DNA of 64,000 nt from positions 372,001-436,000 of the forward strand of contig NIVC01000551.1 in NCBI GenBank assembly GCA_002269645.1, read 5' to 3'. Source of the DNA: Macrostomum lignano (Eukaryota). How positions within the stretch are numbered: position 1 is the first letter of the stretch; every line of letters starts with the position of its first letter. The translations under genes and the position numbers were made by a program. Positions 11,558-64,000 of this stretch are shown here, in pieces. Below the pieces are notes generated by a model. It was not told the DNA's origin, searched no databases, and was given only the letters and a program-made list of their open reading frames with translations.

Positions 11558-11590
<33 letters not shown>

Positions 11591-11599
11591 GTGATACAG

Positions 11600-11632
<33 letters not shown>

Positions 11633-18822: not shown

Positions 18823-21800
18823 TTAAGCTTCATTAGTAGCATCGAATGCTTCGTTATCGCGACCAGCCGCAGTGGTGGCGGAGGTGGCCCTGACATAAAC
18901 TGGATCGTTCGATGACTCATCAGTAAGCGAATCTGCGCCAATTGTTGGCGGTTAGCTACTGTTAGTAATCACGTCGGATTTCGGTTTTAAAAATAAACGG
19001 CAGTTTCTATATTCAAATTGTAAAACTCACCATTGAATGCGCTGATTCGTTGCTTTTTCTGCACAAAATTCAGCAGAAATTTATAGATGAAGGCGTACTG
19101 GTGCTGAAATGCGGCCAGGGTGAGGGATTTAAATGGGATTGCACTGCCTTGGGAATGATAGCGGCTTGTAGTCCAGGATCTGGGAAGCTGGCTTAGCAAC
19201 TGAGGATCTGTGAGGCTGGCATAGCAACTGGGGATCTGGGAGGCTGGCATAGCAACTGAGGATCTGTGAGGCTGGCCCAGCAACTGAGGATCTGGGAAGC
19301 TGGCTTAGCAACTGAGGATCTGTGAGGCTGGCATAGCAACTGGGGATCTGGGAGGCTGGCATAGCAACTGGGGATCTGGGAGGCTGGCATAGCAACTGAC
19401 ACTCTGTGAGGCTGGCATAGCAACTGGGGATCTGGGAGGCTGGCATAGCAACTGACACTCTGTGAGGCTGGCATAGCAACTGGGGATCTGGGAGGCTGGC
19501 ATAGCAACTGACACTCTGTGAGGCTGGCATAGCAACTGGGGATCTGGGAGGCTGGCATAGCAACTGGGGATCTGGGAGGCTGGCATAGCAACTGGGGATC
19601 TGGGAGGCTGGCATAGCAACTGACACTCTGTGAGGCTGGCATAGCAACTGGGGATCTGGGAGGCTGGCATAGCAACTGACACTCTGTGAGGCTGGCATAG
19701 CAACTGAGGATCTGGGAGGCTGGCATAGCAACTGGGGATCTGGGAGGCTGGCATAGCAACTGAGGATCTGGGAGGCTGGCATAGCAACTAGGGATCTGGG
19801 AGGCTGGCATAGCAACTGAGGATCTGGGAGGCTGGCATATAGCAACTAGGGATCTGGGAGGCTGGCATAGCAACTGAGGATCTGGGAGGCTGGCACAGCA
19901 ACTGAGGATCTGGGAGGCTGGCACAGCAACTGAGGATCTGTGAGGATGGCCCAGTAACTGAGGATCTGGGAGGCTGGATCAGCAACTGAGGATCTGGGAG
20001 GCTGGCCCAGCAACTGAGGATCTGGGAGGCTAGCCTCAAGCACCCGCAGACATCCCAAACCGCCCCGCACATACCTTGGTCTGCACCATGTCCACCCGAC
20101 AGCGCCGCAGCTGCAACACGGTCTCGTAGACGCTGACCTCCTGACGCTCCTGACAGTCCTGCAGCCGGCGGGCCAGCAGGTCCAGCGCGATGAAGGTGCC
20201 GGTGCGGCCGACACCTGCGCTGCAGTGCAACACGATTCGGCCGCCGCCGCCGTTGCGCTGCGAGCGGTGCACCCGGCCGAGAAACTCGGCCAGATTGTCC
20301 AGATTGGGCACAGCGTGATCCTCCCATTCCATGTACTGCAGCAGCTCAGTGTCCATGCCGGACGCTCGGCCATCTGTTGTTTTATTATCAGTATTCGGCA
20401 TCAGGCGCAGTTTCCGAACAATATAAGAGCCGCAGTTCTCAGCGCTGAGCAGGGTCACAGTGAGTCCGCAGTCCAGTTCGAGGCTTTCGCCTTCGCTATC
20501 CGGCCAATACTGCTCGCATTTGGTCTGCAGACCGATTGGGGGTCAGCTTTAGTTGCCTAGCAACACGGACATAACTTTGACTGCCAAAGATTCGGAAATG
20601 AGAATGAGAAGATGAGACAGAAGAACAGAGGAACATGATTCAGGGAAAAGGGGAGAGAGGATTTAGGTTCAGGTTTAAATTTAGGATAGAGTTCAGGTTA
20701 GATTAGGGTAATAGAGAGAATGTTTAAAGATTAGATTTAAGTTAAGGTAAAAATGTCTGGGTTAGGAGCCTCTCACTTTGTCGGGAGAGAGGGAGTTGAA
20801 AGAGGGAGAGAAGAGGGGAGCTACGGGAAGGAGAGAGGGAGATGAGAGATCGAGGAGAGAAAGAGAAGAGGGGAGAGAGGGAGGAGAGGGAGAGGGAGAT
20901 GAGAGAGGGCGGAGGGGGAGAGTCAGGGAGGGGGGAGAGACACGAGAAAAGGAGTTGGAGAGTGATCAGCCAACCTTAAAAGTTCTCATCAGCACACAAT
21001 CAATTACGACATCAAAACAGAATCGCCAGATCAAAGAACAAACGCAGCTATCGCTCACCCTTCCTTTCTCAACGCAGGTGGTCAGCATGACAGTGACTGG
21101 CACCATCTGTTCCCAGATCATGCGCCAATGATCTGACACGGTAGCCGGCTTGGGACCTTGGCAAGCGATAAATGGTGCACTACTAGCAGTAGCATCTTCG
21201 CTCACATAGCTAGCATTAATATAGTCATTATCTCCGCTCAGTTTCACTCGGTTATTATCGAACGGTAAAATATTGATGTAGCGATTCTTTTCTCGATTGC
21301 CGCTAGCCAGACCGTCTTCGGTGGAGAATGATTTAGTCTGCTCAATGGCCGCCTGCTTCATCAGGCTGTACTGCTGATCACTGAGGCAGGCCGCGTCCGC
21401 CAGGAGCTTCTTTGCGTAGGCGGCAAATTCTGCGGCTGGCACCGAGAGCGGTGGTGATGGAGACTGCGGAGGCTGGGGCGGCGACAGCGGCGGCGGCTGA
21501 GGCTGAGTTGGCGACATCCGCGGAGGCTGAGGCGGCTTATGGCTGCCATTAAATGAGAAATACAGCATCAGAAATGTATTATTATTGTGCTTAATGAGCT
21601 TGAAATGAAACTATAGCCTGTCTGTTTCTACAGTAGGGGGGTCAATGGGTCTGTCTCATCTTACAGCAGGGGTCAGCAGGTCTGTCTCACCTTACAGCAG
21701 GGGTCAGCAGGTCTGTCTCACCTTACAGTAGGGGGTCAGCATGTCTGTCTCACCTTACAGCAGGGGGGTCAGCAGGTCTGTCTCACCTTACAGCAGGGGT

Positions 21801-30800: not shown

Positions 30801-33800
30801 AATCTAAAAGAATAATATCCCACTAATTCATTTTAAAAAGGCATTAGGCTTCCACCAAAACAATCGATAAACTTAAAATGGCGCCCGAGACTCACAGGTG
30901 AGCAGCTGTCCCACCTCCGCCAATGCGGGCTTGAAGCCGCCCACCTTCAGCACGACAATCTGCAGGCTGAACTTCGAGCCCGACTGCAGGGAGTCGCAGG
31001 TGGCGCTGAGCCGCTGCTCAGGCGAGGTGACATTTCTGATCACGACTGAGCCGTCTGAGCCGCTGACGCAGCGCAGCTGGTGGTGAACTCCAGCACCGGT
31101 GGCTGAGGCGTCCCAGGTCACGCTGATGGCTGACTCATTGGCTGAGTAGCTGACCGAGTTGGGGTTCACTGAGTACAGCTCTGCGGCGGTTGGCGGGTGC
31201 GAGGGAATTGGTGAGGTGCGAGTTCTTTTAGTCGCAAGAAGACGCAAGCGAGCAAGAGCGAAGAGGCGACGAGACATGTACCCAGACACGCGCTCACACT
31301 GGGTGCACAGCCGCCCTGACTTTCCAAGCCAGGACCACTAGAAGTGGTCCATAATCCTTAATCACATACATATCAGGAATCTCGCATTGAAAGACTCTGA
31401 GTGAGTCTTGGTTCTGAGTGAGAAAGCATTGAATCAAAATATAGGCTTTAACCATTTTTAAGACTATAGAAAGTAATTGTATAAAATAGATTTTGCTTCA
31501 AAAAATTTAACTTAAATTTAAGTCGATAAACTAATTAAGCCACCTTAAGACCCAAGCCCATGTCCAGGGTCTTGCGATCGTCTATTAAGAACTTAAATTT
31601 GATTATAATCTATCTTTCTAATTCAGTTTCAGGCCTTTAAATACTGAAGAATCCGTAGAATACGACTGATAAGTCCCACTACAACGGAGAGTTCAAAAGT
31701 TCCTTGCCATTGGGGTGTTAGCGATTTCTGTTATTATCCAAATGACACAAAATCTAACCCGAGTCATTTGACTCTCAGGAACCAAAAAATTCAAAACGAA
31801 TTGTGAGATAAGGTGAGCTGAACTTATAGATATTTATTTGCAAAATTTGATACAACAATCAATAAAAAGATGCATCATCAAGTTGCAGTTGAAGCTTCAA
31901 CATACGTGAGATGCGAACACTAGATGAAGCACATATTCAAAAATTGTTGATATAAGAATACGATAATATAAAAGATGTGACAAAAGCAGCACTCACTGGT
32001 CAGCTGATTGGACAGAGCCGTGATGACGTCATCAAAGCCGCCCGTCTTCTGCACAACCACCCGCAGCTCATATTCCTGTCCAGACTGCAGGGAGCCGCAG
32101 GTGGCAGACGGAGTGGGTGAAGACGCGGTCGAGACTTCACCTGAGCCGACTCGCTTGCAGGTGAGCTGGTACGAGACGCCAGAAGTTCTGGATGGCTGCC
32201 AAGTCACAGAGATGGCGGTCTCATTGGAGCTATACTGAGCTGAGCTGGCGTCAATGCCGAACAGCTCTGCAATGAAACGGACCCAATAGAAGCGAGCTGT
32301 GCCTCATCAGAGCAGCTGCAATCATTTGCTGAGCTCCAACTCACTGGTCAGCTGGATTGGCAGCCAGGTGACAACTTCATCGAAGCCGCCCTGCTTAGTG
32401 ACAGCCACACTCAGGTTGTAGGCTTCTCCTGACTGCAGATTGCTGAAGCCGGCATTCAGATACTGTGATGGAGGCAGAGATGAAGAATCCCCTGTGCTGA
32501 CTCGCCTGTACGTCACCCGGTACAGAACTCCTTCAGTGATGGACGCCGCCCAAGTCAGGTGGATGGAAGTCTCTGTGATGGTGAAACTCACTGAGCTGGC
32601 GTCGATCGGGAAGAGCGCTGCATTTGCGAGGTGGGTGGGCAGCTCCTGACTTAAAAGTCCCAATTACTGTCAAATTATCATCTGATACAGACATTCCTGT
32701 CTGCTAAATTTCTTACCCTAAATATCAGTTGCTTTTGAGCACGCAGAAATATAGATGCAGCTCAAAATGAGTGAGCATTTTGTGTCTACAAATAGTGTCA
32801 GTGAGTTCACAGGCCGGGCACTGGGCGCTCGCCCTGAGCAGTCATGCCAGCTCCTCTGAGCCCTGAGCAGTCATGCCAGCTCCGCTGAGCCCTGAGCAGT
32901 CATGCCAGCTCCGCTGAGCCCTGAGCAGTCATGCCAGCTCCACTGAGCCCTGAGCAGTCATGCCAGCTCCACTGAGCCCTGAGCAGTCATGCCAGCTCCG
33001 CTGAGCCCTGAGCAGTCATGCCAGCTCCGCTGAGCCCTGAGCAGTCATGCCAGCTCCGCTGAGCCCTGAGCAGTCATGCCAGCTCCGCTGAGCCCTGAGC
33101 AGTCATGCCAGCTCCGCTGAGCCCTGAGCAGTCATGCCAGCTCCGCTGAGCCCTGAGCAGTCATGCCAGCTCCGCTGAGCCCTGAGCAGTCATGCCAGCT
33201 CCGCTGAGCCCTGAGCAGTCATGCCAGCTCCGCTGAGCCCTGAGCAGTCATGCCAGCTCCGCTGAGCCCTGAGCAGTCATGCCAGCTCCGCTGAGCCCTG
33301 AGCAGTCATGCCAGCTCCGCTGAGCCCTGAGCAGTCATGCCAGCTCCGCTGAGCCCTGAGCAGTCATGACAGTTACCCTGAGCAGTCATGCCAGTTCCCC
33401 TGAGCAGTCATGCCAGCTCCGCTGAGCCCTGAGCCAGCTCACTCACACAGGATGTACAGCAGCCCCGACTTTCTCACTGCACACTCTGGGCCTTGGGAGG
33501 GCTTGGACCCTAATGGGCAAAAATTGCACAACAAACTTCAGGCTTAATTTTCGTGCACGGAGCTCAAGGTTAATTGAGCTCGGCTGCTCTGGCATGAGAA
33601 AAATCCATGCATGCTTTGAGCCAATTGGTCAGGTTTCAGTCACGTGACGATTCTCCCAACCAATGAGCACTGAGCAAATAGAAGAAAATTGTAAATCTTG
33701 AATTATGAAATCCGAGAAACTGGATGTAGTGATTGACACAATTCTGCGATTATGAAGGCATGAAAAGGGCACACGGCATTAACCTACAGACATTTAGCTG

Positions 33801-36800
33801 TCTAATTACATTATATTATGCGTGGTTCAGACCATCACAGACTCTTATACTGTCTATTCAAAATGATTAGTTTGCTTGGTTTTTTTATTCTTGATGGAAG
33901 GCTTTTTCCCCAGTCGTTTTTCTATTGCTTTTGTGTTATCTACCCCTGGTATATAACATGTTGTGATCAAAATCGAAAAACTAATATCTTATTTCTATGC
34001 TAGAATGCACGCAATTTCACAGTTGTTGTAGGGAGCGAATAAACTTTTGTTAGTGTTATTTTTGTTAGGGACAAGTGACTAATCAAATTCACTGATTCAC
34101 TCCAAGTTTCATAGGCCAATTGATATTGTACGAAGAAATTTTCAAAGCTATGAAACTGTTTCTAAGACGGTATTTTAACATTATTTTAGCGCCAATTTAA
34201 AATTTTTATCATTTAAAACAAAAGCTTTAACACGAAAAGAGATCGTACCTTAGAAGTTAGGCCCTACTATGTCTATTTTGTATAAATATTAAAACCTTCA
34301 TATTGCAGTTTAATATGCTGCAATGAAGTTTTAATACTTATGGACTTTTTAACAATCCTTCTAAAGATTTGTCTTCTTCTGTGGGTGTACTCCCAGCTTG
34401 AAAGGTGGCTGCTTATGAATGTATAAGCAATAAGAAGGATAATACCGATGGAGTGTATAAGATAAGGAAAAAAAGAACCCAGTAACACTTTTCCATACAT
34501 GTAGTGAAGTTTCGACAGTGAGCAGCCTTTGGCGTGAAAGTCAGACGAGTTTGCCACAAAGCCGGTCTGGCCCTCAAGTATTGAACTGCATCAATGATTA
34601 TGCCATATACATGCTAGATGCTAGATACAAGATTCATACAGGTAAAACTGTGGCACCGCAGCAGCTGAGCACTCACTGGTCAGCTGGTTGGATAAAGACG
34701 TGATGACGTCATCAAAGCCCGCCTTCTGCACAGCCACCCGCAGCTCATAGGCCTGTCCAGACTGCAGGGAGCCGCAGGTGCCAGACGGAGTGGGTGAAGA
34801 CGCATTCCAGACTTCACCTGAGCCGACTCGCTTGCAGGTGAGCTGGTACGAGACGTCAGAAGTGCCGGATGGCTGCCAAGTCACAGAGATAGCGGTCTCA
34901 TTGGAGCTGTACTGAGCTGAGCTGGCGTCAATGCCAGAGAGCTCTGCAAGTTTTAATGGATATCTGTAGAATAAAATCTATAAATTTGATAAATTTACCT
35001 GAAAAAAACTGAGCGATGACGCAATAGTCCAACTGCTTAAATTAGCTAGAAGTAGTAGTAAATTTTTATACTGCCTCCAACTTAGTGTTTACTGGTAAAA
35101 CAGTTGGTCATTACCGCACTGTCTAAGCAAGGACCACTATTAAAGTTACCGTTGTATCAGGACCTAACACTAGAAAATACTGCAAAATTATTTGAAGACT
35201 GGCCTAATGCTTCCGTGTACTTCGCTATGTTTATAGCGTAGAAAACTGCACTAGCTTTGTGCAACGGTAGCTCTAAATTTGGTGCATGTATATTTTGTTA
35301 AGGTTTTAACCTGTTAAATCTACATACTTAAAATTATTTATGTTATTACATGCAACATTCCGAATTCTGGAGAACTAAATTAATGACAGAAGAGTAATTT
35401 AACCAAAATATTCTTTTTATATGCTTTGTCTGTCTTTGGAGTATCTTGCCTAATCTCTAAGCTTTATATGCTAGGTTGTAGCCAAGTAGTTAAAGCATCG
35501 GACTTACGACTCAAAGATCGGGGGTTCGATTCTCGACCCACTAAGAACAATTTGTGTCCTTCAGCTTCAGTTCACTCAGCTGTAAAATGGGTGCCAGCAT
35601 TAGCTGTGGTAATTGAGGGTGTGTGGCGACCCCCCCCCCCAGTCCTTGGACTGAACAGCCGTACGCAGCCTTCAGATGCGCTGCGCAATAGCTGCGGCTG
35701 ATCTGTCGGTAGTCAATTAGTAAAGTATTATTAATTAATAAACTATTATTTATGCTAGGCTATTTTAGACAACTAAAGCTATTTTCTTGGCGGACTGTCG
35801 CGGTCGCGGGTCTTTCCAGACCAGATCGCTGATGACATGGATGACTTTTTGTTGTCCTGGTTGAACACTGGCCGGTCAGATCTCGTGGCATCTCCGAATT
35901 CGAACCCCGAAGGATCAGAAAAGTCTTGAAAGCACCTGTGAATTGTCCTGCAAATCAAGCAGTTGTCCAGCAGTGTGGGTCCCGAGATCCTCCCCTACTT
36001 CTGCTGCAGAGTATCCAAGCTGATAAATAGAGCGATACTAAAGCTGCTTAACTGACTCTTGCGAAAGATTGTGGGCTATAAACAAAATGCACTGGTACTG
36101 CTGGACTACCCACAAGTGCATGTACACATGTCTACATGTACTTTCGACAGAAGCATGCAGTGACATAACTTTGCTTATGACACACCTGACATATTTTAAA
36201 GTGAAAATCAAGAATTACCCTGCATTTATGTTAATTATTATGAAAATTTAGTCATACTTATAGACAAAAAAAATGTTATCATTGACAACTTAAAATATTC
36301 ATACTTAATTAATCATACTATTAATTTTTAAGAAAGACAGCTTGTTTACAAAATTTTGTTTAAATAGATGTTAACAACTGAGAATTTGAGTAAATAATTT
36401 GAATCTTATAATCATTCTCATCACATATTAACCATCAGTGCGTATTTTAGTTGTGCCGTATCTCTGATTCAGATAAAGGGATTTTTATGACTTGGCATGC
36501 TGTCAGTTGTAACGCAGTTTCCTTATTTCACAACTTTTGAATGATATCATAGAGGTTCGTTAGAAGACCTAAATAAATATTTTTAAATGTTGGAGTCCAT
36601 GTTGCACCAGTGTGTCAAGATTTCAAAAATATTGCCCCCTACAACTACTCAAGTAGATACGGGAAACTGCGTTTTAGGGGGCGAGTTCTACCGAAAAAGA
36701 CATTGGGAAGAATGGGGGTTTTCATTTATTCAGCACAAAAACGGTTACTGTTTCTAAAAAGAGGCAGACCTAATGTTTATCTTTTAATATGACTTGCCTT

Positions 36801-39800
36801 TCATACAGCTCTATCGATATTCATAGCCTGTCTTCTAAAAATTCCAATAAATAAAGTTTCTCGTCTCTCTACTTGAGTAGTCCATGATTACCTCACCGAT
36901 TTTATAATTGCGATTCTTTGATAGCGAGAAGCATATATAAATTTCTGAAGCAGCCAATTCAACACTTATTTTTTTATTAGAGGCAGGGGGGGTTGTGTGC
37001 ATCCTGGCGCACTTTAAGCGACATTGGCACACAACCGGCGAGAGGCATTACTGCCCATTCTGCCGACTCCCCTGAGCAGGCACACAAGCGCGCGGATACG
37101 TACGCAGGCACACACTCACACAGGAGTGTACAGCGGCCCTAACTTTATATTATCGTTAGGCATGTACACTTCACTGCGCCTTGGGGGGTTGGCTCTCAAG
37201 GCCGTTAATTGCACGAGCAGAGCCAAGCCGAGATTCCAATTCAGCCCCAAATTAATGTGACTGCACTTGGAATCGAGCCTGGGTCGCTGGCACACCAGAG
37301 CCTGCGCTAGACCGCTGGGCTACGGCCCCCGCATTCAACACTGTACAGATTATTTACTTTTCAAAGCTTCTCAACTACAGGGCTATTCTGATATGAAACT
37401 TTGTCAAGACAAGATAAACTGACTCGCAACTTCATTCTTTTTGTCTGCAAGAAATACTGCGTATTTGGAAACTTTGCGTCATCAAACCTGAAGACAACAA
37501 AATTTCAAATAAAAGCTGACGAAAGCAATGCAAACACGCTGGCCTTCCCAATAATTTTGCAATATTTACGAGTACGAGTGTTGCTTCCTGATACTACGGT
37601 AACTGCTAGTGGTCCTTGATTAGCGATGTACAATCCTGATTGCACAAGCCAAAACCCTCAATCCCTACTGCAAAATCAATGCACACGGCTTGTATTGTGA
37701 TTTGTTATCTCAACTGCCTCAACTGTTGCAACCGCTATTTGCAAGGATTTCCAAAACAAAGCACCAGGGAACTCACTGGTCAGCTGATTGGACAGAGGCG
37801 TGATGACGTCATCAAAGCCGCCCGACTTCTGCACAGCCACCCGCAGCTCATATTCCTGTCCAGACTGCAGGGAGCCGCAGGTGGCAGACGCACTGGATGA
37901 AGACGCAGTCGAGACTTCACCTGAGCCGACCCGCTTGCAGGTGAGCTGGTACGAGACGCCAGAAGTGTTGGATGGCTGCCAAGTCACAGAGATGGCGGTC
38001 TCATTGGAGCTGTGCTGAGCTGAGCTGGCGTCAATGCCGAACAGCTCTGCAATTGATGAGCATCTCTGACGAGTTTGATTTCTAATGAAGGCAGTTAAAT
38101 TAATCTATAAGTAATTACTACATGTAATTCATAAGCAAATTTACAGGTATTGAGAGCACACTAAATCTTGCCACTTACACAGTCAAGCAGAGGCTCCAAG
38201 ATTGCAGATGGCGCTTGGCAGTTTATAATTTTATTGAGCAGCAATTTATTGGGGAATTTCAGGACAGCTCGTGACTTATACCGTACCTGACTCTGCCTGC
38301 TCACTGAGCAAGTCTGTCAATAAAGAATTTCCAGGTGTGCATGGCTTCACGAAAAATGGAAACCACATTAACCAGAAACCAATTTCATACAGTATCCACA
38401 ACTACTAGATGTACTTTAAAAGTAAGGAGAATTTTGTCATAACTCATGAACTTTAAATTTTTATCCAACAACTTTATAAATAGAGCCAACAAAGACCTTC
38501 ATTTTCTAATTGATATAACTGCTCGCTGTGTATTTTGATTTGAAAGTGTCCAGACCTCGATATTAAAAATTACGCCTTCTGTCTATGGTAAAAAGGTTTA
38601 GAGCTTGAAATTTATTTTTCTGCATTTGGTTGCCTGGTTGGTTGAACACTTTCTTCTACCATAGACAAAACATGTCCCGCGAATACAGGGAGCGGAGAAT
38701 ACTCATAATCTCCGCGAATCTAGTCAATATTCTCCGCTCTTTGCATTCGTGGGATACATTTAAATAACCAACTGAAACGAGGAGAATGTCTATGGATAAT
38801 CTCAGAGGTCCTAACCGGAACCCTAACCCTAACCACCTAGGAGATTCTGCATAGACATTTTCCTCGTTTCAGTCGGTTATTATACATCAGTTTCATCTAA
38901 GTTATTATTCTTCCATTTTCTACTTTAGGAATCTGTAATCAGTGCAAATCAGTCTAGATGAGTGATATTGCTGCTATCATTTCAACTCGATATGAAATTT
39001 TCGTTTGATCAAATCTCAACTCAGTTTAATTATCAAAGTTTCTAAAAATTCATCATAATACAAATTATATTGTAGTTCTGGCCACGTCTGTATTACAGTA
39101 CAGCTAAAATATCTCCAATATGACAATGGAGCTCACTGGTCAAAGCTGTGCCGTAAATGAAATTCGCAGGCTCAAACCCAGTCTTGACGGGTCTCACTCT
39201 GACAGTGACAGAGGCTCCGGATGGCTGGCCTGTGCACACAGCGGTTGTGTCTGGCACTCTGCCAGCGCAGCTGACTTCATACTCGACTCCGGCATCGGGA
39301 GAGGCCGCCCACCGGGCTCTGAAGCTCGTCTCCGTCACATCCGAAATGTGCACTGGTCCTGGGATATTGCTGAGAACTGAAATTTAGTAGGGAATTGCTT
39401 AACTAATGTTGTGAAGTTTCGCCAGCTGGTTTTGAATTTAGGAGTGAGAAATACTTTGAATTTATTTATAAATCGAGGTGGCCAGGTGTGGCACCTGAGG
39501 CTGCGTGCATTCTGCACTGAATGACCCGCACAGTTTTCATTCTCACGTGTCCTTCCAGAAAGATGGAATGCAGGGCTGAGGCTGCAGTTCTGAAGTCCAG
39601 CCTGAATGGAGAAGTTGTACTCAGTAGCCGCTGTGAGACCTCGAAATGTGAATGTCTCATCTGAAGTGTTGTGCTGCCGACTGGGACAGCTGGGGCAGTT
39701 TACTGTGTAAAAGTACCCTGTGATGCCACGGTCTGGTGGCAGCCAATCAACTGTTATTGATGAAGATGTAGAAGAGCGAACTTTAGCCACTGTCACAGGA

Positions 39801-39952
39801 TCCACCTGACCCGGCACCAGTTTTCCACACGACGTGCCTTGAGCAGCCGCCTCATCGCACAGCAGCAGAGCAGCTGCAGCAGCAACCAGAAGCAGCCAGC
39901 AGCAGCAACTGCAGTGAAAGAGTCGTGGAATTCCAGTTGACATGCCAGACAT
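18823..39952 (-). CDS. Receptor-type tyrosine phosphatase, R3-subtype architecture (signal peptide, about 12-13 FN3, TM, single PTP domain), about 1700 aa
   Basis: Exons 39952-39547, 39358-39137, 38046-37777, 34943-34677, 32617-32345, 32266-31997, 31180-30896, 29695-29363, 28714-27591, 23887-23463, 22065-21949, 21542-21059, 20524-20075, 19103-19031, 18932-18823. All junctions are GT-AG and phase-compatible, 5109 nt in total. TM segment MTIVVAVAVSVLVAMAIAAGLLGLVWYRRR; PTP motifs KNRYINILPFD, DYINAS, IACQGP, KCEQYWP, WEDHAVP, VLHCSAGVGRTG, MVQTKHQY. The first and last exon boundaries are less certain. Confidence 0.9.
19176..20035. repeat. 28-bp intronic minisatellite GGCATAGCAACTGAGGATCTGGGAGGCT
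   Basis: Direct tandem repetition in an RPTP intron. Confidence 0.95.
21630..21912. repeat. About 31-bp intronic minisatellite CAGCAGGTCTGTCTCACCTTACAGCAGGGGT
   Basis: Direct tandem repetition. Confidence 0.9.
22540..23140. repeat. 15-bp intronic minisatellite GGGAATCCCAGTCAT
   Basis: Degenerate tandem repetition. Confidence 0.9.
24060..26060. repeat. 10-12-bp CATCACTCTC(C) minisatellite, interrupted at about 24340-24650
   Basis: Direct tandem repetition. Confidence 0.92.
26950..27548. repeat. 20-bp intronic minisatellite CCGCTGTCCCTTCAGTCCCT
   Basis: Direct tandem repetition. Confidence 0.95.
28738..29350. repeat. 17-bp intronic minisatellite AGAACCAACACTCACTC
   Basis: Direct tandem repetition. 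Confidence 0.95.
29728..30062. repeat. 17-bp intronic minisatellite CTGAGTGACACTGTGAG
   Basis: Direct tandem repetition. Confidence 0.95.
30412..30640. repeat. 30-bp intronic minisatellite
   Basis: ATGCTGAGATGCCAGAGACTCAATGGACAC units. Confidence 0.9.
32832..33432. repeat. 29-bp intronic minisatellite GCCCTGAGCAGTCATGCCAGCTCCGCTGA
   Basis: About 20 near-perfect copies. Confidence 0.97.
35474..35750 (+). mobile_element. tRNA-derived SINE (family 1), full-length, in an RPTP intron
   Basis: A-box-like TAGCCAAGTAG, B-box GGTTCGATTC, AT-rich tail, 7-bp flanking direct repeat TATGCTA (35467-35473 and 35751-35757); second copy at 4573-4753. Confidence 0.8.
36967..37332 (-). mobile_element. tRNA-derived SINE (family 2, tRNA-His-like head), full-length
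   Basis: Head GGGGCCGTAGCCCAGCGGTCTAGCGC...GGCTCGATTCC (A and B boxes), A-rich tail, 10-bp target-site duplication ATTCAACACT (36957-36966 and 37333-37342). Partial copies at about 11925-12055, 31245-31325 and 33439-33520. Confidence 0.8.
38673..38886. mobile_element. Small non-autonomous element made of two adjacent hairpins, one with a (CCTAAC)n loop
   Basis: Inverted arms GGGAGCGGAGAATA/TATTCTCCGCTCTT and AACTGAAACGAGGAGAATGTCTATG/CATAGACATTTTCCTCGTTTCAGTC. Superfamily not determined. Confidence 0.5.
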
Positions 39953-54589: not shown

Positions 54590-55329
54590 ACAGGGCGCTT
54601 TTCGGAGCCTGGGCGCAAACTAAGCCGCACCGCCGGCAGTGTTCAGGACGCCGGCATCAGCCAGCAGGCAATCGACGAAACGCCGAGTGTGCGTCTGTTC
54701 CCGCCGGTAGGGTGCGGCCTGCAGCGTCAGCAGCAGCGCACCTCATGCACCGATTGCGGGCAGTTACTACGACTCGTTTGGATGATGGCTTGCCAGCTGG
54801 AGTTTCCGAAGGCGCAACAGTTGGCTGTGACAGACAGGCTGGTGCGGCGATAGAGTGCCGCATTTGGTGACTCGCTCGAAGCCAAATTTTGCTTAGCCGC
54901 ATCAACCTGATGTTCAAGTGAACCCTCCAGCGTCCAGGTCTCAGTGTTGTACATGTACAACAGGACGGTATCGATCACCGCTGAAACAGCGAGGCCTCCC
55001 CCTTTGACGGTTACATGGCCTCTGCACGGAGAAGTCGTCAGGCACCAGAATGGCTGACAGTGCTGCAGCTTCGTCACCTTCCCGTCAGCTCCTCGGCAGA
55101 AACTTCCAGCCTCGATGTCATCCGGCACGCAGAGCACGACGTGGGCTACACTGAAACTCTTCCTTCTCTCGGCAAAGGTGGCTGCGATCGCCGGACGCCG
55201 ACCCGTAGTAGCCAGTTCATTCAGCGCTCCAACACCTCTACGGCCTCGTTGGTCCGCCGATGTGTACCAGAGGGTCCAACCAGCGCCCAGGTCCTCACAA
55301 TGAAAACCCGGGTCGGCCCTGATGGACAC
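54590..55329 (-). mobile_element. Degenerate, internally deleted RTE-like LINE
   Basis: AP-endonuclease-like fragment (IRADPGFHCEDLGAGWTLWYTSADQRGRRGVG) joined to RT-distal fragments (VPDDI, AVIDTVLLY..NTETWTLEGSLEHQVDAA, NAALYRR, RRFVDCLLADAG); frameshifts and stops present. Confidence 0.75.
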
Positions 55330-57949: not shown

Positions 57950-58253
57950 AAGCACAGGTTGCAATGTAAAATCATCCCAAAGTTCTTACCTATAAAGTCG
58001 TAGTTTAAATTCAAAAAGCTCAGAGAGATTTGAATGAGAGTTGACGAAGCCTCTTAGGATTTATTAAATATAATTAACTATCGCTAATGGTAAATTACTG
58101 GGAATAAAAGGGAGGGGCAGAGAGCGAGTGAAAAGTATGTCATACATGCTGTACAATAGCAACCCTGAAACCCTGCAATACTCTCTACAATTCTCCTCAG
58201 GGGAAAGATCGATTACAAATAATTCGAAGGTAAATAAAAACAATGAGATATAT

Positions 58254-60072
58254 GAGGCAACACACTGGGGGCAACACACTGGGGGCAACACACTGGGGGC
58301 AACACACTGGGGGCAACACACTGGGGGCAACACACTGGGGGCAACACACTGGGGGCAACACACTGGGGGCAACACACTGGGGGCAACACACTGGGGGCAA
58401 CACACTGGGGGCAACACACTGGGGGCAACACACTGGGGGCAACACACTGGGGCAACACACTGGGGGCAACACACTGGGGGCAACACACTGGGGGCAACAC
58501 ACTGGGGGCAACACACTGGGGGCAACACACTGGGGGCAACACACTGGGGGCAACACACTGGGGGCAACACACTGGGGGCAACACACTGGGGGCAACACAC
58601 TGGGGGCAACACACTGGGGGCAACACACTGGGGGCAACACACTAGGGGGCAACACACTGGGGGCAACACACTGGGGGCAACACACTGGGGGCAACACACT
58701 GGGGGCAACACACTGGGGGCAACACACTGGGGGGCAACACACTGGGGGCAACACACTGGGGGCAACACACTAGGGGGCAACACACTGGGGCAACACACTG
58801 GGGGGCAACACACTGGGGGCAACACACTGGGGGGCAACACACTGGGGGCAACACACTGGGGGCAACACACTGGGGGGCAACACACTGGGGGCAACACACT
58901 GCGGGCAACACACTGGGGGCAACACACTGCGGGCAACACACTGGGGGGCAACACACTGGGGGCAACACACTGGGGGCAACACACTGCGGGCAACACACTG
59001 GGGCAACACACTGGGGGCAACACACTGGGGGCAACACACTGGGGGCAACACACTGGGGGCAACACACTGCGGGCAACACACTGCGGGCAACACACTGGGG
59101 GCAACACACTGCGGGCAACACACTGGGGGCAACACACTGGGGGCAACACACTGCGGGCAACACACTGGGGGCAACACACTGCGGGCAACACACTGGGGGC
59201 AACACACTAGGGGCAACACACGGGGGCAACACACTGGGGGCAACACACTGGGGGCAACACACTGGGGGCAACACACTGGGGGCAACACACTGGGGGCAAC
59301 ACACTGGGGGCAACACACTGGGGGCAACACACTGGGGGCAACACACTGGGGGCAACACACTGGGGGGCAACACACTGGGGGCAACACACTGGGGGCAACA
59401 CACTAGGGGCAACACACTGGGGGCAACACACTGGGGGGCAACACACTGGGGGCAACACACTGGGGGCAACACACTGGGGGCAACACACTGGGGGCAACAC
59501 ACTGGGGGCAACACACTGCGGGCAACACACTGGGGGCAACACACTGCGGGCAACACACTGGGGGCAACACACTGGGGGCAACACACTGCGGGCAACACAC
59601 TGCGGGCAACACACTGGGGGCAACACACTGGGGGCAACACACTGGGGGCAACACACTGGGGGCAACACACTGGGGGCAACACACTGGGGGCAACACACTG
59701 CGGGCAACACACTGCGGGCAACACACTGGGGGCAACACACTGCGGGCAACACACTGGGGGCAACACACTGGGGGCAACACACTGCGGGCAACACACTGGG
59801 GGCAACACACTGCGGGCAACACACTGGGGGCAACACACTAGGGGGCAACACACGGGGGGCAACACACTGGGGGCAACACACTGGGGGAAAACACTGGGGC
59901 AACACGTTGGGGGCAACACATTGGGGGGGGGGCAACACACTGGGGGCAACACACACTGGGGGCAGCACATTGGGGGCAACACACACTGGGGGCAACACAC
60001 TGGGGGCAACACACTGGGGGCAACACACTGGGGGCAACACACTGGGGGCAACACACTGGGGGTAACATTGGG
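58254..60072. repeat. 14-bp minisatellite GGGGGCAACACACT (about 1.8 kb)
   Basis: Direct tandem repetition; the source of the spurious long Cys/Pro-rich ORFs. Confidence 0.97.
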
Positions 60073-60857
60073 GGGCGCCTTGCAAAGGATGCCATACGAG
60101 GGGCGTTGCAATGGTCGCTAGCTGTGCTTCGGAGGTGAGGGGGCGGCAGTTTCCTTTGCACTAATTGTGCTGAGAAGGTGCCACCTCTATACCTGTACTC
60201 TGACAAGTTTTCTAAATCAACAAGCAAACTTGAGCGGAAAATGTTGGAACTAATTAGATTAACAAAATCCTTAGATTTGCTATTTTTCTCTTGTTTGCGA
60301 TGCAATATTTAAAAAAACAAACAAACCGGATATGCATGCCTTATCAATTCTGAACTGAATACATTTAGGCATGCCGCAAAAGAAGACTCAAAATTTTCAA
60401 ATGAACTCAGCTAACCAGTGAAATACTGTATGGACTCATCCGGGTCCAGATAAAAAACACGAGCTCGATAAGAACAGTTTTTTTCGAAATTTCTTGACTT
60501 TATGAGTACTGAGTCCTGACTCTTTTTCCAGCTAGATTTTCTATTTAATCTACATGTACTCATACATATATACGGGTTTGTCTGTACAAATCGTACGCTT
60601 CGCTACACAAGGCAAGGCCTATAGCCATAGGTTGCATGATACAGTAGAAAACTACAGATAAGAGCGAGCTCATGGTAAACGAGTGAGTTACGAATAGTCT
60701 GATAAAGCATTAGTCATGGGTAATCATTAATCGCCTATAAATAGTACTGAAAGTCGAGCTGAAAAAATAAGTTTTCAAAGCAAGTCATACATCTACTGAC
60801 TGAATATAAATTAACTACCCGGTAGAGTTTTAAAAACGAATTAAACAAAACTACTAA

Positions 60858-63800
60858 ATGAGATCTCAAGCAGACAGAGGTCGGTCTCTCTTCTGTTTCT
60901 ACAGGCTGTTTCTGGTTGCTGCTGCAGCTACTCTGCTGCTGTGCGATGAGGCGGCTGCTCAAGGCACATCGTGTGGAAAACTGGTGCCGGGTCAGGTGGA
61001 TCCTGTGACAGTGGCTGCTGTTCGCTCTTCCACAAATTCATCAATAATTGTTGATTGGCTGCCACCAGACCGTGGCATCACAGGGTACTTTTACACACTG
61101 AGCTGCCCGAGCTGTCCCACTCAGCAACTCAACGCTTCAGATGAGACATACACATTTCGAGGTCTCACAGCGGCTACTGAGTACAGCTTCTCCATTCAGG
61201 CTGGACTTCGGAACTGCAGACTCAGCCCTGCATTCCATCTTTCTAGAAGGACAGGTGAGAATGAAAACTGTGGGGTCATTCAGTGCAAAATGCACGCAGC
61301 CTCAGGTGCGCCATTGGCTGCCACACCTGCCACCTGGATTTCTGAAAAAATTCATTTTGAATTTTGACTCTAACTAATCTTCATTTGATTATTAGATGAT
61401 TCGTTTACTATTAAAAATAAAAATTATTGCTAATTTAATACTGCTTAAGTACCAAACCTCGCGAAACTTTAAAACATCAGTTGAGCATGTCCCAACACAA
61501 TTGCAGAACTCAGCAATATCCCAGGACCAGTGCACATCTCGGATGTGACGGAGACGAGCTTCAGAGCCCGGTGGGCGGCCTCTCCCGATGTCGGAGTCGA
61601 GTATGAAGTCAGCTGCGCTGGCAGAGTGCCAGACACAACCGCTGTGTGCACAGGCCAGCCATCCGGAGCCTCTGTCACAGTCACAGTGAGACCCGTCAAG
61701 ACTGGGTTTCCGCCTGCACCTTTCATTCATGGCACAGCTTTGACCAGTGAGTTCCAAAAATATTAATTACCTTTTAATGATATGTTTTATAAAGTATTTA
61801 CAACACTCAGTCATCCATGTGTGACCTCTAGGCATCTTTGGCTGATATTAAATCACTAGAGGAGTTAATCAGCCTTTTGAAAATAAATCGTAAGTGCACT
61901 CAGTCCAGTGTCACTCAGCCAATCCATCTGACAAGTGATATAGAGCTTATTAAATGATTGCAGCTGCTCTCATGAGGTTGCTTTGATGTGGTCTATTGGG
62001 TCCGTTTCATTGCAGAGCTGTTGGCATCGACGCCAGCTCCAATCGATGTGGTTTCCTTTATTTGCACCACTGTGAATCAGAGACAACAGTTCGTTGCACA
62101 TTGAACTCTCACCTTTCCCAAATGGTTTTTTGTGCATTTTGCCTTCCACGCATGCCTTACAAAATGAGATGCCGTCAGCCTGCATGCTGCTTTTATCCAT
62201 TGCGATTCCTTCCACTATGCTTCCTCGAAACAGTGATTTCAGAGCTTGCTGCTCCATTAGCTACGGTGAATTCTTCGAGTTAGTAAAGCCTTCCAATTTT
62301 CATGACGTCTCCAGCAACGTTTCCACTTTTGTCTACAATTTTATACAGTTTTGAAAACTGCACATTAAAGCTTTTTTCTTGTAACCGCTAATACTGAGAA
62401 CAAGTGTTGGTTTAACTAGCTAACATTATATCACACCACAGACCACACGACATGAAATAAATTATTGATTCGAAATGCTCACTGATTTTGAGAAACACTT
62501 ATATTTCTACTTGCTAAAAAACAAACATTTGCTGTCATTAGATATTTATCAGGCAGGCATGCCCCGGTGTAAAATGATAATAAGACAAAAATTGGGACTT
62601 TAAAGTTAGGAGCTGCCCACCCCCCCTCGCTACCGCAGAGCTCTTCCCGATTGACGCCAGCTTAGTGAGTTTCACCATCACAGAGACTTCCATCTCCCTG
62701 ACTTGGGCTGCGTCCATCACTGAAGGAGTTCTGTACCGGGTGACCTGCAGGCGAGTCAGCACAGGGACGTCAACATCTCTGCCTCCATCAAAGTATCTGA
62801 GTGCCAGCATCAGCAGTCTGCAGTCAGGAGAGGCCTACAACCTGAGTGTGGCTGTGACTAAGCAGGGCGGCTTCGATGAAGTTGTCACCTGGCTGCCAAT
62901 CCAGCTGACCAGTGAGTTGGAGCTCAGCAAATGATTGCAGCTGCTCTCATGAGGCTCAGCTCGCTTCTATTGGGTCCGTTTCATTGCAGAGCTGTTCGGC
63001 ATTGACGCCAGCTCAGCTCAGTACAGCTCCAATGAGACCGCCATCTCTGTGACTTGGCAGCCATCCAGCACTTCTGGCGTCTCGTACCAGCTCACCTGCA
63101 AGCGAGTCGGCTCAGGTGAGGTCTCGACTGCGTCTTCATCCACTCCGTCTGGCACCTGCGGCTCCCTGCAGTCTGGACAGGAATATGAGCTGCGGGTGGC
63201 TGTGCAGAAGGCGGGCGGCTTTGATGACGTTATCACGGCTCTCTCCAACCAGCTGACCAGTGAGTGCTCGGCTGCTGCGGTGCCACAGTTTTTCCTGCAT
63301 GCATCTTATTAAACAATATTTACCTGAGCATAATCATTGATGCAGATGAATACTCGAAGGGCAGAGCAGCTGTGGCAAACGTTTTTGACTTCCACAATGT
63401 CGAAATTTTTAACTTGTCGGAATTATATCACTTATCAGTGACTGACTGACTGAGTTTCCTTGACTTCTTACTCTTCTTCTTACTTCTGACTCAGTAAATT
63501 GATTGCAGGCCTTCTTAAAAGCGACTGATATTTGCAGTCATTAGAAATTTATCAGGCAGTAGGAGGTCTCTGTATCGGATGATAATTTTGGCAAAAATTT
63601 GGGGCTATAAGTCAGGGGCTGCCCTACCCACAGATGGAAACAGAGGTTCATGTGCGACAGCAGACTGGCTGCAATTCAATGGCTTCTGCTACCTCCTGGT
63701 CAAGGGATCCAACGGACGAAACCTCACAGCGGCAGTTTCTGACTGTCAGAGACGAGACCCGTCTGCTCACCTGCTGTGGATCACATCTCAGTCGGAGATG

Positions 63801-63973
63801 AACTGGGTGATGGACTACTCAGCAAGGAACTGGAGACTCAGAGAAGACTACAGAGCTCAGTGCCAAGACTGCAGGTTTCAAGGAGACGCGGCCTGGACCG
63901 GACTGTACAGATACGAGGCAGACGGAGGGAAGTTCAAGTGGCTCAGAGACAACTCCAGCGTCAACGTCAGCAT
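60858..63973 (+). CDS. FN3 x4 + C-type lectin domain protein, paralogous to the RPTP ectodomain (3'-incomplete)
   Basis: Exons 60858 (or acceptor 60905)-61254, 61525-61746, 62639-62911, 62990-63259, 63634 (or 63616)-63973. The FN3 junctions are phase 1 and the last donor is AT|GTAAGC. CTLD motifs CATADWLQFNGFCYLL, AVSDCQRRDPSAHLLWITSQSEMNWV, AWTGLYR, FKW. A possible tiny first exon ATG GTA AAC GA|GTGAGT at 60672-60682 would give MVNELFLVAAAATLLLCDEAAA. Confidence 0.8.
61952..62039 (+). pseudogene. Dead copy of an FN3 'type A' exon start with its upstream intron
   Basis: Copy of the 62929-63012 sequence (AAATGATTGCAGCTGCTCTCATGAGG...TTTCATTGCAG|AGCTGTT) with a 1-nt deletion, truncated at a Copia fragment. 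Confidence 0.7.
62040..62352 (-). mobile_element. Ty1/Copia pol fragment (GAG-pre-integrase region)
   Basis: KIVDKSGNVAGDVMKIGRLY* and FCKACVEGKMHKKPFGKGESSMCNELLSLIHS match the Copia C..C..GK.H..PF...L.LIHSD pattern. Confidence 0.75.
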
Positions 63974-64000
63974 GTAAGCTCTTGTTGCAGGTGGCCTGGG

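What the first reader, a model, noticed from the sequence alone, without database searches (positions are those of the whole stretch)
60858..63973. Receptor-phosphatase ectodomain exons recycled onto a C-type lectin: a young chimeric receptor or decoy
The plus-strand gene at the right end carries near-identical copies of the signal/FN3-1, FN3-2, type-B and type-A exons of the minus-strand RPTP (39952-31997), with the same exon lengths (222, 273, 270 nt) and phase-1 junctions. The 78-bp B-A intron differs at only about 2 positions between the genes. After the fourth FN3 it splices into a C-type lectin exon that the RPTP lacks. This is phase-1 exon shuffling at an early stage. It could yield an FN3-CTLD protein sharing the phosphatase's N-terminal binding surface and acting as a decoy, ligand or partner. 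Sequence identity is seen; function is inference.
Basis: partly seen in the sequence, partly recalled or inferred. Interest (0 to 1): 0.72.

Follow-up and report, generated by a model that had tools for sequence, protein, structure and literature searches.

The report
Flatworm secreted FN3–lectin-like mosaic gene

Summary
Window 60858-63973 carries five GT-AG exons: signal peptide plus FN3-1, FN3-2, FN3 'B', FN3 'A', and the first exon of a divergent C-type-lectin-like domain (CTLD). All FN3 junctions are phase 1. The FN3 exons are 92-96% identical to exons of the minus-strand single-domain receptor phosphatase. The 78-bp B-A intron differs at 2 positions.

The window is Macrostomum lignano contig NIVC01000551.1. 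The model is the first 506 residues of GenBank PAA81093.1 (BOX15_Mlig011792g1, 651 aa, 'hypothetical protein'), which comes from an RNA-seq-derived annotation. Two more exons beyond the window end the protein with no transmembrane segment and no phosphatase domain, so it is predicted to be secreted.

'Young' is not supported:
- Alignable introns between the two genes are only 75-81% identical.
- The CTLD differs from its nearest relatives by dS 0.40-0.55.
- Three diverged, intact copies of the gene exist.
- Another M. lignano gene family (Mlig027029) already has FN3-CTLD architecture.
- FN3 exons are as similar between paralogues as between recent copies, which points to gene conversion.

The decoy function remains inference. 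This is an ordinary mosaic gene family with a well-resolved junction.

The parts
60858..61254 (+). Exon 1 of the FN3-CTLD gene: start codon, signal peptide and FN3-1. It ends in phase 1.
   Evidence: The model is. It is identical to residues 1-132 of PAA81093.1. The hydrophobic segment at residues 11-29 is the only one with a Kyte-Doolittle score above 1.6. Homology to the phosphatase exon 1 runs from about 60896 at 91.6%.
61507..61746 (+). Exon 2: FN3-2, 240 nt, phase 1-1.
   Evidence: It is 94.6% identical to 39376-39137.
61917..62040 (+). Dead cassette inside intron 2. It holds the last ~18 nt of a type-B exon with a mutated donor, a B-A-type intron, and the first ~30 nt of a type-A exon with a 1-nt deletion.
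   Evidence: Alignment A4 and a blastn hit at 82% to 32361-32242. The same remnant is present in locus L001.
61973..62260 (-). Antisense fragment resembling a retrotransposon gag/pre-integrase region. It interrupts the dead type-A exon.
   Evidence: The ORF was seen, and a longer 184-aa version lies in the 1.2-kb larger L001 intron. There is no Pfam hit. The identification rests on motif resemblance only.
62639..62911 (+). Exon 3: FN3 type B, 273 nt, phase 1-1.
   Evidence: It is 92.7% identical to 32617-32345.
62912..62989 (+). The 78-bp B-A intron, which is nearly invariant across the family.
   Evidence: 76/78 identical to 32344-32267. It is 75/78 identical to the L003 copy, and the L003 copy is 77/78 identical to the phosphatase intron.
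62833..63119 (+). Low-divergence tract against the phosphatase gene. It spans the end of B, the intron and the start of A, and is a candidate recent gene-conversion tract.
   Evidence: 5 differences in 287 nt, against 28 in the remaining 343 nt. The scan permutation gives p=0.0045.
62990..63259 (+). Exon 4: FN3 type A, 270 nt, phase 1-1.
   Evidence: It is 95.6-95.9% identical to phosphatase exons A1 and A3 and 95.2% identical to its own copy in L001.
63260..63395 (+). 5' part of intron 4, homologous to the intron that follows phosphatase exon A2.
   Evidence: 80.7% identical to 34676-34534.
63500..63625 (+). 3' part of intron 4, homologous to the intron just upstream of type-B exons. The receptor-derived sequence therefore runs to within about 10 nt of the CTLD exon's acceptor.
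   Evidence: blastn at 74.6% to 32739-32631 and alignment A1.
63634..63973 (+). Exon 5: first exon of the CTLD-like domain, 340 nt, entering in phase 1 and leaving in phase 2. The donor GT is at 63974. The gene continues beyond the window.
   Evidence: It is 87-88% identical at nucleotide level to five CTLD 'a' exons at the Mlig027029 locus, and the homology starts at about 63636-63644.
39547..39952 (-). Receptor phosphatase exon 1: signal peptide and FN3-1.
39137..39376 (-). Receptor phosphatase exon 2: FN3-2, 240 nt.
37777..38046 (-). Receptor phosphatase type-A exon A1.
34677..34943 (-). Receptor phosphatase type-A exon A2, 267 nt (one codon shorter).
32345..32617 (-). Receptor phosphatase type-B exon.
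31997..32266 (-). Receptor phosphatase type-A exon A3.
20198..21298 (-). The single tyrosine-phosphatase catalytic domain of the minus-strand gene.
   Evidence: Pfam Y_phosphatase at 2.2e-30 on ORF 20039-20542. The motifs NRxKNR, YINA, KCxxYWP, WEDHAVP and HCSAGVGRTG each occur once.

Best explanation
The plus-strand gene is the annotated Macrostomum lignano gene BOX15_Mlig011792g1 (PAA81093.1). It has seven exons, of which five lie in the window.

The encoded protein has a signal peptide, four FN3 domains, one divergent C-type-lectin-like domain and a truncated second one. It has no membrane anchor and no phosphatase domain, so it is most likely a secreted extracellular binding protein.

The gene is a mosaic of two older lineages:
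- An FN3 exon block of the local cluster of R3-like receptor tyrosine phosphatase genes. One such gene is inverted upstream and another lies about 10 kb downstream.
- A CTLD block from an M. lignano-restricted CTLD family.

The seam sits within about 10-20 nt of the exon-5 acceptor. Intron 4 is receptor-type at both ends, and CTLD homology starts at the first codons of exon 5.

The mosaic is not recent. The high exon similarity to the neighbouring receptor is maintained by repeated gene conversion among phase-1 FN3 exon cassettes, including the short B-A intron that lies inside the cassette.

Shown here: the structure, the homologies, the divergence figures, and the identity to a GenBank model whose annotation was built from RNA-seq assemblies.

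Inferred: gene conversion as the homogenising process, secretion, and any role as a soluble competitor or partner for ligands of the neighbouring receptor's N-terminal FN3 domains.
For: Identity of the locus:
- Locus L002 (NIVC01000551.1) matches window 50858-64000 at 13143/13143 bases.
- The seven-exon GT-AG model translates exactly to P0011, which is PAA81093.1.
- GenBank models of this assembly come from a StringTie/TACO RNA-seq assembly (PMC5730564).
- A second UniProt model, P0013, has the same 'NQLT|NGNRGSC' junction.

Domains:
- Pfam fn3 scores 9e-25 with 4 stretches, and Fn3_Dep-1_3rd scores 2.3e-6.
- The CTLD region hits only CTLD chains in the PDB: DEC-205 at 1.4e-4 and a profile best of 1.3e-3.
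- All of the Foldseek top-50 matches are CTLDs.
- Library-wide phmmer hits P0021/22/23/25 are Pfam Lectin_C proteins.

Secreted product: there is no hydrophobic segment besides the signal peptide, and no phosphatase or membrane-tail exons within 10 kb downstream in three loci.

Seam: intron 4 ends match the post-A2 intron (80.7%) and the pre-B intron (74.6%). CTLD homology begins at about 63636 in the same frame as the Mlig027029 CTLD exon.

Age:
- Introns are 75-81% identical against 92-96% for exons.
- FN3 dS to the receptor is 0.082. This is about the same as the dS of 0.056-0.080 among the three copies.
- CTLD dS to its nearest relatives is 0.40-0.55 with omega 0.12-0.23.
- Three intact copies exist.

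Conversion:
- The A-exon identity matrix is a star.
- There is a low-divergence tract with p=0.0045.
- Between the window and L001, FN3 exon 1, B and A are more diverged (93-95%) than the introns (95-98%).
- Relationships among the three copies are mosaic.

Older architecture: the Mlig027029 group has signal peptide, FN3-1, FN3-2, FN3 and CTLD(s).
Against: - No RNA-seq reads were inspected directly. Transcript support is second-hand, through annotation pipelines.
- Pfam Lectin_C does not hit the domain. The structure model is low confidence (pLDDT 51).
- Gene conversion is inferred from divergence patterns on few sequences. No formal genome-wide test was run, and the other family members of the genome were not available.
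- dN/dS of 0.4-0.7 in the FN3 part is compatible with relaxed constraint. The second CTLD is truncated.
- Secretion rests on a hydropathy scan only.
- The origin of the 5' end (promoter and first ~13 codons) is unresolved.
Confidence: 0.75

Rival explanations
1. A very recent duplication copied the receptor's 5' exons and spliced them onto a CTLD exon. The high identity simply reflects youth, and the gene is at an early stage of exon shuffling.
For: - Exons are 92-96% identical, the B-A intron 76/78 and the first ~80 nt of intron 1 90%.
- A dead B/A cassette in intron 2 shows the FN3 block came from a longer receptor-type array.
- Synonymous divergence to the receptor is only 0.082.
Against: - Other alignable intron stretches are 75-81% identical, and most intron and 5' flank sequence is unalignable.
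- FN3 dS to the receptor equals the dS among the gene's own three copies.
- A exons show no orthology signal.
- CTLD dS is 0.40-0.55 to every known relative.
- The junction is shared by three loci.
- The FN3-CTLD architecture already exists in a paralogue group that is about 50% diverged.
Confidence: 0.13
2. Annotation artefact. The CTLD exons belong to a separate downstream gene, for example a trans-spliced cistron of one transcriptional unit, and the FN3-CTLD join is a read-through or assembly chimera.
For: In M. lignano about 7% of assembled transcripts are multi-gene precursors and 39% of genes are trans-spliced (PMC5730564). No reads were examined here.
Against: - The frame is continuous across canonical GT-AG sites in all three copies.
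- The CTLD frame has no nearby in-frame ATG or signal peptide of its own. This follows from reading the exon 5 sequence.
- The annotation pipeline cuts transcriptional units at trans-splice sites.
- A second model has the same join.
- The Mlig027029 paralogues have the same architecture and phase.
Confidence: 0.05
3. A decaying by-product. The gene is a transcribed but functionless remnant of a receptor duplicate fused to CTLD debris.
For: - FN3 omega is 0.43-0.70, with B-exon omega at or above 1.
- A dead cassette and a transposon fragment lie in intron 2.
- The second CTLD is truncated.
Against: - All three copies keep a 651-codon open frame and all splice sites.
- The CTLD shows omega 0.12-0.23 against relatives. 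For CTLD plus tail, omega between copies is 0.14 for L001-L003 and 0.49-0.59 for comparisons with the window copy.
Confidence: 0.07

Closest known systems
BOX15_Mlig027029g1 and relatives (P0004, P0005, P0007, P0008) in M. lignano
   Same: Signal peptide, FN3-1, FN3-2 and a further FN3, then CTLD(s) of the same subfamily. The FN3-to-CTLD junction is phase 1 and the CTLD is split into two exons at the same place.
   Different: - The FN3 part is only 40-58% identical in protein, and the CTLD is 78-83% identical in protein (87-88% nt).
- It has one A/B-like FN3 rather than two, up to three tandem CTLD units, and a C-terminal hydrophobic anchor in P0007.
- No intron homology to the window gene was found.
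R3-subtype receptor tyrosine phosphatases (PTPRJ/DEP-1, PTPRB, PTPRO, PTPRH; Drosophila Ptp10D/Ptp4E). The comparison is from my own knowledge of the family; the minus-strand gene here is of this type.
   Same: An ectodomain made only of FN3 repeats, with a Pfam Fn3_Dep-1_3rd match. The N-terminal FN3 exons are 92-96% identical to the neighbouring receptor.
   Different: No transmembrane segment and no phosphatase domain. It carries a CTLD instead. The UniProt name 'Protein-tyrosine-phosphatase' on models P0012 and P0013 does not fit, because those sequences stop at or near the same C-terminus.
Secreted receptor-ectodomain proteins such as phosphacan, the soluble form of RPTP-zeta (from my own knowledge)
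   Same: A soluble protein that shares the extracellular binding domains of a receptor phosphatase and could compete for or present its ligands.
   Different: Phosphacan arises from the same gene by alternative splicing. Here a separate gene with its own 5' end carries a foreign CTLD. No binding data exist.
Exon-shuffled mosaic extracellular proteins built from phase 1-1 modules (the classical exon-shuffling model; from my own knowledge)
   Same: Symmetrical phase 1-1 FN3 exons of 240, 273 and 270 nt. The recombination seam lies at an intron/exon boundary, and the frame is preserved.
   Different: It is not an early-stage case, and the similarity is maintained by homogenisation rather than recency.

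Membership tests
Fibronectin type III domain proteins (Pfam PF00041) | A significant profile match over repeated units of about 90 residues. | tested here: met
   fn3 scores E 9e-25 (87 bits against a cutoff of 25) with 4 stretches. Fn3_Dep-1_3rd scores 27.8 bits against a cutoff of 26.
C-type lectin-like domain (CTLD, Pfam PF00059) | A match to the curated Pfam Lectin_C profile. | tested here: not met
   No Lectin_C hit at E<=10 for the window fragment, P0002 or P0009.
C-type lectin-like domain (CTLD, Pfam PF00059) | Sequence homology to proven CTLDs. | tested here: met
   - phmmer against the PDB hits only CTLD chains: DEC-205 at 1.4e-4, then CLEC4D, CD302 and snaclecs.
- In the profile search the top 19 hits, and most of the 36 listed, are CTLD chains, with a best E of 1.3e-3; a few antibody, nanobody and homeobox chains appear at E>0.2.
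- In a search of 1.84 billion proteins, hits P0021/22/23/25 (E 1.4e-5 to 4.8e-4) carry Pfam Lectin_C at E 6e-15 to 3e-64.
C-type lectin-like domain (CTLD, Pfam PF00059) | The CTLD fold. | tested here: inconclusive
   The AlphaFold2 model has pLDDT 50.9 and pTM 0.50. All 50 best Foldseek PDB matches are CTLDs, but at TM about 0.3 and E 1e-3 to 9e-2.
C-type lectin-like domain (CTLD, Pfam PF00059) | Conserved cysteines and the WIGL motif. | tested here: inconclusive
   Read from P0011. Present: the N-terminal Cys pair (C400, C412), the helix-1 Cys (C431), the final 'FCK' Cys (C545) and 'WTGL'. The second canonical disulfide pair is absent, and an extra CxxC lies at 470/473. Motif positions were judged by eye against my own knowledge of the CTLD consensus.
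Ca2+-dependent carbohydrate-binding C-type lectins | An EPN or QPD triplet and a WND motif in the long-loop region. | tested here: not met
   Neither motif is present in residues 394-550 of P0011 (sequence). Sugar binding is therefore not supported.
Receptor-type protein tyrosine phosphatase (for the plus-strand gene) | A transmembrane segment and at least one intracellular PTP catalytic domain. | tested here: not met
   The full 651-aa product ends at a stop in exon 7. No hydrophobic segment is present beyond the signal peptide. No PTP-like sequence lies within 10 kb downstream in three loci.
R3-like receptor tyrosine phosphatase (for the minus-strand gene) | An FN3-only ectodomain and a single catalytic domain with the HCxxGxxR[ST]G motif. 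| tested here: met
   FN3 exons run from 39952 to 27552. Y_phosphatase scores 2.2e-30. One set of catalytic motifs lies at 21298-20198. The transmembrane exon was not mapped.
Young chimeric gene (recent exon shuffling) | Parental lineages are identifiable for both halves, and the seam is at an intron with compatible phase. | tested here: met
Young chimeric gene (recent exon shuffling) | Neutral divergence from both parents is low and the gene has a restricted distribution. | tested here: not met
   Introns are 75-81% identical to the receptor. CTLD dS is 0.40-0.55. Three diverged copies exist. An older paralogue group has the same architecture. Presence in other species could not be tested.

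The most novel reading that the evidence does not exclude
The secreted FN3-CTLD protein and the neighbouring receptor phosphatases may form a matched pair. Under this reading, gene conversion keeps the soluble protein's N-terminal FN3 binding surface in step with the receptor's, so that it remains an effective competitor or co-factor for the same ligand while the FN3 domains diversify. In support, FN3 exon 1, B and A are more diverged than introns between the window gene and its L001 copy, and B-exon dN/dS is at or above 1.
Probability: 0.1. Interest if true: 0.55.

Novelty: new member of a known kind. Interest (0 to 1): 0.3.

Why it matters
The locus is a clearly resolved example of how mosaic extracellular proteins are built and then kept similar to a parent gene. 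The seam can be placed to within about 10-20 nt of a splice acceptor. A dead cassette records the longer ancestral FN3 array. Exon-limited homogenisation makes an old mosaic look young.

This is a practical warning: exon identity alone misdates chimeric genes in repeat-exon families and in neopolyploid genomes such as M. lignano.

Functionally, the gene offers a candidate soluble partner for an R3-type receptor phosphatase in a flatworm model that can be manipulated genetically. It does not change any general understanding.

Tried and rejected
- Pfam on the CTLD region gave no Lectin_C hit. The CTLD call had to be rebuilt from the PDB, Foldseek and the library-wide search.
- The AlphaFold2 run on a shallow 5-sequence alignment gave a low-confidence model, usable only as a weak fold indication.
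- A word-indexed search with the CTLD plus tail found only P0009. The informative paralogues came from searching with P0009 itself.
- P0009 has no contig on record, so a pure CTLD donor locus could not be read.
- Literature and supplement searches for Mlig011792, Mlig022912 and Mlig027029 found nothing. No expression or phenotype data were obtained.
- The Rfam scan of the window found nothing.
- The idea that the receptor has a missed CTLD exon was rejected by tblastn at E<=10.
- The idea that the gene continues into membrane or phosphatase exons was rejected.
- I tested whether P's 5' end comes from the Mlig027029-type gene, which would indicate conversion of an older FN3-CTLD gene. The 5' ends do not align, so this is unresolved.
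- A three-way site pattern (window, L001, receptor) was uninformative about the direction of conversion.
Full report
**What is in the sequence**

Window 60858-63973 contains five exons with canonical GT-AG borders that read as one open frame:
- 60858-61254 (397 nt): signal peptide and FN3-1.
- 61507-61746 (240 nt): FN3-2.
- 62639-62911 (273 nt): FN3 'B'.
- 62990-63259 (270 nt): FN3 'A'.
- 63634-63973 (340 nt): start of a lectin-like domain.

All FN3 junctions are phase 1. Pfam finds four fn3 stretches (E 9e-25) and a Dep-1-type FN3 match.

**Comparison with the minus-strand gene**

- 60904-61354 to 39897-39457 at 90.1%.
- 61458-61756 to 39425-39127 at 91.6%.
- 62473-63268 to 32780-31988 at 90.5%.
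- 62983-63276 to 38053-37760 at 94.6%.

Feature by feature, the exons are 91.6-95.9% identical and the 78-bp B-A intron is 76/78 identical.

The minus-strand gene is a receptor phosphatase. It has FN3 exons from 39952 down to about 27552 and a single catalytic domain (Pfam Y_phosphatase 2.2e-30, with one set of motifs at 21298-20198). It has no CTLD-like sequence anywhere in the window, even at tblastn E<=10.

- FN3-2 is 240 nt, not 222.
- The exons are not 'near-identical'.
- The receptor has two extra type-A exons between FN3-2 and B.
- Homology begins inside exon 1 at about 60896. The first ~13 codons are only faintly similar, and the 5' UTR and flank do not align.

**Where the window comes from, and transcript support**

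All protein hits are from the flatworm Macrostomum lignano. Locus L002 (GenBank NIVC01000551.1, assembly GCA_002269645.1) is identical to window 50858-64000 at 13143 of 13143 bases.

I extended the five-exon model with two further exons beyond the window. In window-equivalent coordinates these are 64815-65180 and 66145-66214. The seven-exon model translates exactly to PAA81093.1, BOX15_Mlig011792g1, a 651-aa 'hypothetical protein'.

GenBank models of this assembly were made from a genome-guided RNA-seq assembly (StringTie/TACO). Transcriptional units were cut at trans-splice and poly(A) sites (PMC5730564). A separate UniProt model (P0013) has the same FN3-A to CTLD join. I did not see the reads themselves.

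**The product**

The 651-aa protein has one strongly hydrophobic segment, the N-terminal signal peptide (residues 11-29), and eight N-glycosylation sequons. After the first CTLD comes the N-terminal half of a second CTLD-like unit, then a short tail and a stop.

No phosphatase-like exon and no membrane tail of the Mlig027029 type lies within 10 kb downstream in any of three loci. The predicted product is secreted.

**Is exon 5 really a C-type lectin-like domain?**

Pfam Lectin_C does not hit it. Other evidence supports the call:
- phmmer against all PDB chains returns only CTLDs: DEC-205 at 1.4e-4, then CLEC4D, CD302 and snake-venom lectin-like proteins.
- In a five-sequence profile search the top 19 hits, and most of the 36 listed, are CTLDs, with a best E of 1.3e-3; the few non-CTLD chains sit at E>0.2.
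- An AlphaFold2 model is low confidence (pLDDT 51, pTM 0.50). Its 50 best Foldseek matches in the PDB are nonetheless all CTLDs.
- A search of 1.84 billion representative proteins finds only 15 relatives at E<=1e-3. The more distant ones carry Pfam Lectin_C at E down to 3e-64.

The domain keeps the N-terminal cysteine pair, the helix-1 and final cysteines and a WTGL motif. It lacks the second canonical disulfide and has no EPN/QPD or WND motif (sequence; motif knowledge is my own). It is a divergent, lineage-restricted CTLD, and sugar binding is not supported.

**The seam**

Intron 4 is receptor-type at both ends:
- Its first 136 nt match the intron after receptor exon A2 (80.7%).
- Its last ~130 nt match the intron just upstream of type-B exons, both in the receptor (74.6%) and in the gene itself.
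- That homology fades at about 63625.

Homology to CTLD exons of another locus starts at about 63636-63644. It is in the same reading frame as the first CTLD exon of BOX15_Mlig027029g1 ('NGNRGSC' against 'NENEGSC'), 21 nt downstream of that exon's start.

The acceptor AG at 63632-63633 therefore lies inside a junction interval of about 10-20 nt. A CTLD exon sits where a type-B exon would be expected.

Intron 2 holds a dead cassette at 61917-62040. It consists of the end of a B exon with a ruined donor, a B-A intron, and 30 nt of an A exon with a frameshift. It is followed by an antisense fragment that resembles a retrotransposon. The same remnant is in locus L001. The FN3 block thus descends from a longer receptor-type B/A array.

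**Why it is not young**

1. *Intron divergence.* Outside the B-A intron and the first ~80 nt of intron 1, alignable intron sequence between the gene and the receptor is 75-81% identical. The rest does not align.
2. *Three copies.* The gene exists in three copies in the assembly, and all three have intact 651-codon frames and splice sites:
   - Mlig011792g1, which is the window.
   - Mlig011792g2, locus L003.
   - Mlig022912g1, locus L001.

   Their introns differ by about 2-5%, setting aside introns 5 and 6 (72-94%), of which intron 5 carries a minisatellite. Redundancy of this kind is expected in this neopolyploid line (PMC5730564; PMC5704211 and PMC10733133).
3. *Equal synonymous divergence.* FN3 dS between the gene and the receptor is 0.082. 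Among the gene's own three copies it is 0.056-0.080. Yet intron divergence differs several-fold (roughly five- to ten-fold).
4. *Old CTLD.* The CTLD exon differs from each of five CTLD exons at the Mlig027029 locus by dS 0.40-0.55, with dN/dS 0.12-0.23. It is an old, constrained member of that family.
5. *Older architecture.* A second paralogue group (P0004, P0005, P0007 = BOX15_Mlig027029g1, P0008) already has signal peptide, FN3-1, FN3-2, one FN3 and one to three CTLDs. It has the same phase-1 junction, and P0007 has a membrane anchor. Its FN3 part is only 40-58% identical to the window gene.

**Gene conversion as the explanation for the similarity (inference)**

- Type-A exons from the three gene copies, the upstream receptor (A1, A3) and a downstream FN3 gene are 93-98% identical in all pairs. 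There is no orthology signal. For example, the window copy is 95.9% identical to receptor A3 and 95.2% identical to its own L001 copy.
- The B-A intron is 75-77 of 78 identical in all comparisons.
- Against the receptor, a 287-nt tract (62833-63119) spanning this intron has 5 differences, against 28 in the other 343 nt (scan permutation p=0.0045).
- Between the window and L001, the 5' flank is 99.4% identical and introns 1-4 are 95-98% identical (97-98% apart from the short B-A intron). FN3 exon 1, B and A are only 93-95% identical; exon 2 (97.1%) does not follow this pattern.
- The closest copy changes along the gene.
- The gene is flanked by receptor-family genes on both sides. One is inverted about 21 kb upstream. 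Another starts with a receptor-type exon 1 about 10 kb downstream of its stop (L002 25134-25357). Donors are therefore close by.

**Function**

Nothing here tests function. Selection looks moderate on the FN3 part (dN/dS 0.43-0.70) and stronger on the CTLD against its relatives (0.12-0.23). Between copies, CTLD-plus-tail dN/dS ranges from 0.14 to 0.59.

My best guess is a secreted extracellular binding protein. Its N-terminal FN3 domains resemble those of the neighbouring receptors, so it could compete for or present their ligands. The CTLD would contribute protein rather than sugar binding. This is inference by analogy with soluble receptor ectodomains.

**Verdict**

The 'mosaic of receptor FN3 exons plus a CTLD' reading is right. 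The 'young, early-stage' reading is not.

The gene is already annotated, as a hypothetical protein. I found no paper that names it. It is a new, well-resolved member of a known kind of gene, and of modest interest.

Noticed in passing
window 20306-20326 (-): The receptor phosphatase's general-acid loop reads WEDHAVP instead of the usual WPD. The catalytic HCSAGVGRTG motif is intact.
   Followed up: no
window about 32508-32510 (-) and 34677-34943 (-): The receptor's type-B exon has Tyr where all other B exons have a conserved Cys (VTYRRV against VTCRRV). Its exon A2 is one codon short at 267 nt.
   Followed up: no
window 60858-63259 compared with L001 10001-13592: Between two recent copies of the gene, FN3 exon 1, B and A are more diverged (93-95%) than most introns (95-98%; 97-98% apart from the short B-A intron) and the 5' flank (99.4%). 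B-exon dN/dS is 1.1-1.7 on small counts. This could reflect ectopic conversion or diversifying selection.
   Followed up: partly
L002 25134-25357 (about 75991-76214 in window-equivalent coordinates); L003 20229-25728: A further FN3 gene with a receptor-type exon 1 starts about 10 kb downstream on the same strand. That exon is 95% identical to 39926-39703. In L003 the gene is annotated as a product of more than 940 aa.
   Followed up: partly
L004 2337-7184 and 13714-16202: The Mlig027029 locus holds a tandem array of two-exon CTLD units: three inside the gene and more in an upstream 1384-aa gene. Different annotated isoforms use different units.
   Followed up: partly
proteins P0012, P0013, P0001, P0003-P0005: UniProt names several of these FN3 or FN3-CTLD models 'Protein-tyrosine-phosphatase'. 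For P0012 and P0013, which are the FN3-CTLD protein of this gene, no phosphatase part is present. P0008 and P0009 contain wrong-frame stretches of the CTLD exon (for example 'KASATFWSRDPT'), which match the out-of-frame ORF at window 63586-63798.
   Followed up: partly
window-wide, e.g. 58256-60067, 24653-26089, 10733-11655, 14816-16080, 32831-33434: The window is dense with long mini- and microsatellite arrays: 28 TRF rows with score >=400. Several lie inside introns of the receptor gene. A 14-mer repeated 128 times sits just upstream of the FN3-CTLD gene. A large minisatellite fills intron 5 of the L001 copy.
   Followed up: no
window 49166-49805 and 50099-50906: Two arrays built of units of about 151 bp have consensus sequences that look like reverse complements of each other. 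This would be an inverted pair about 300 bp apart.
   Followed up: no
window 14432-16762 (-): A two-exon match to the lipoma HMGIC fusion partner-like (LHFPL) tetraspan family lies downstream of the phosphatase gene (Pfam 5.6e-20 and 1.1e-24).
   Followed up: no
window 2336-4240 (-): Cysteine- and tryptophan-rich ORFs, one with a weak PAN-domain match (7.9e-4). They probably belong to another secreted-protein gene at the left end of the window.
   Followed up: no
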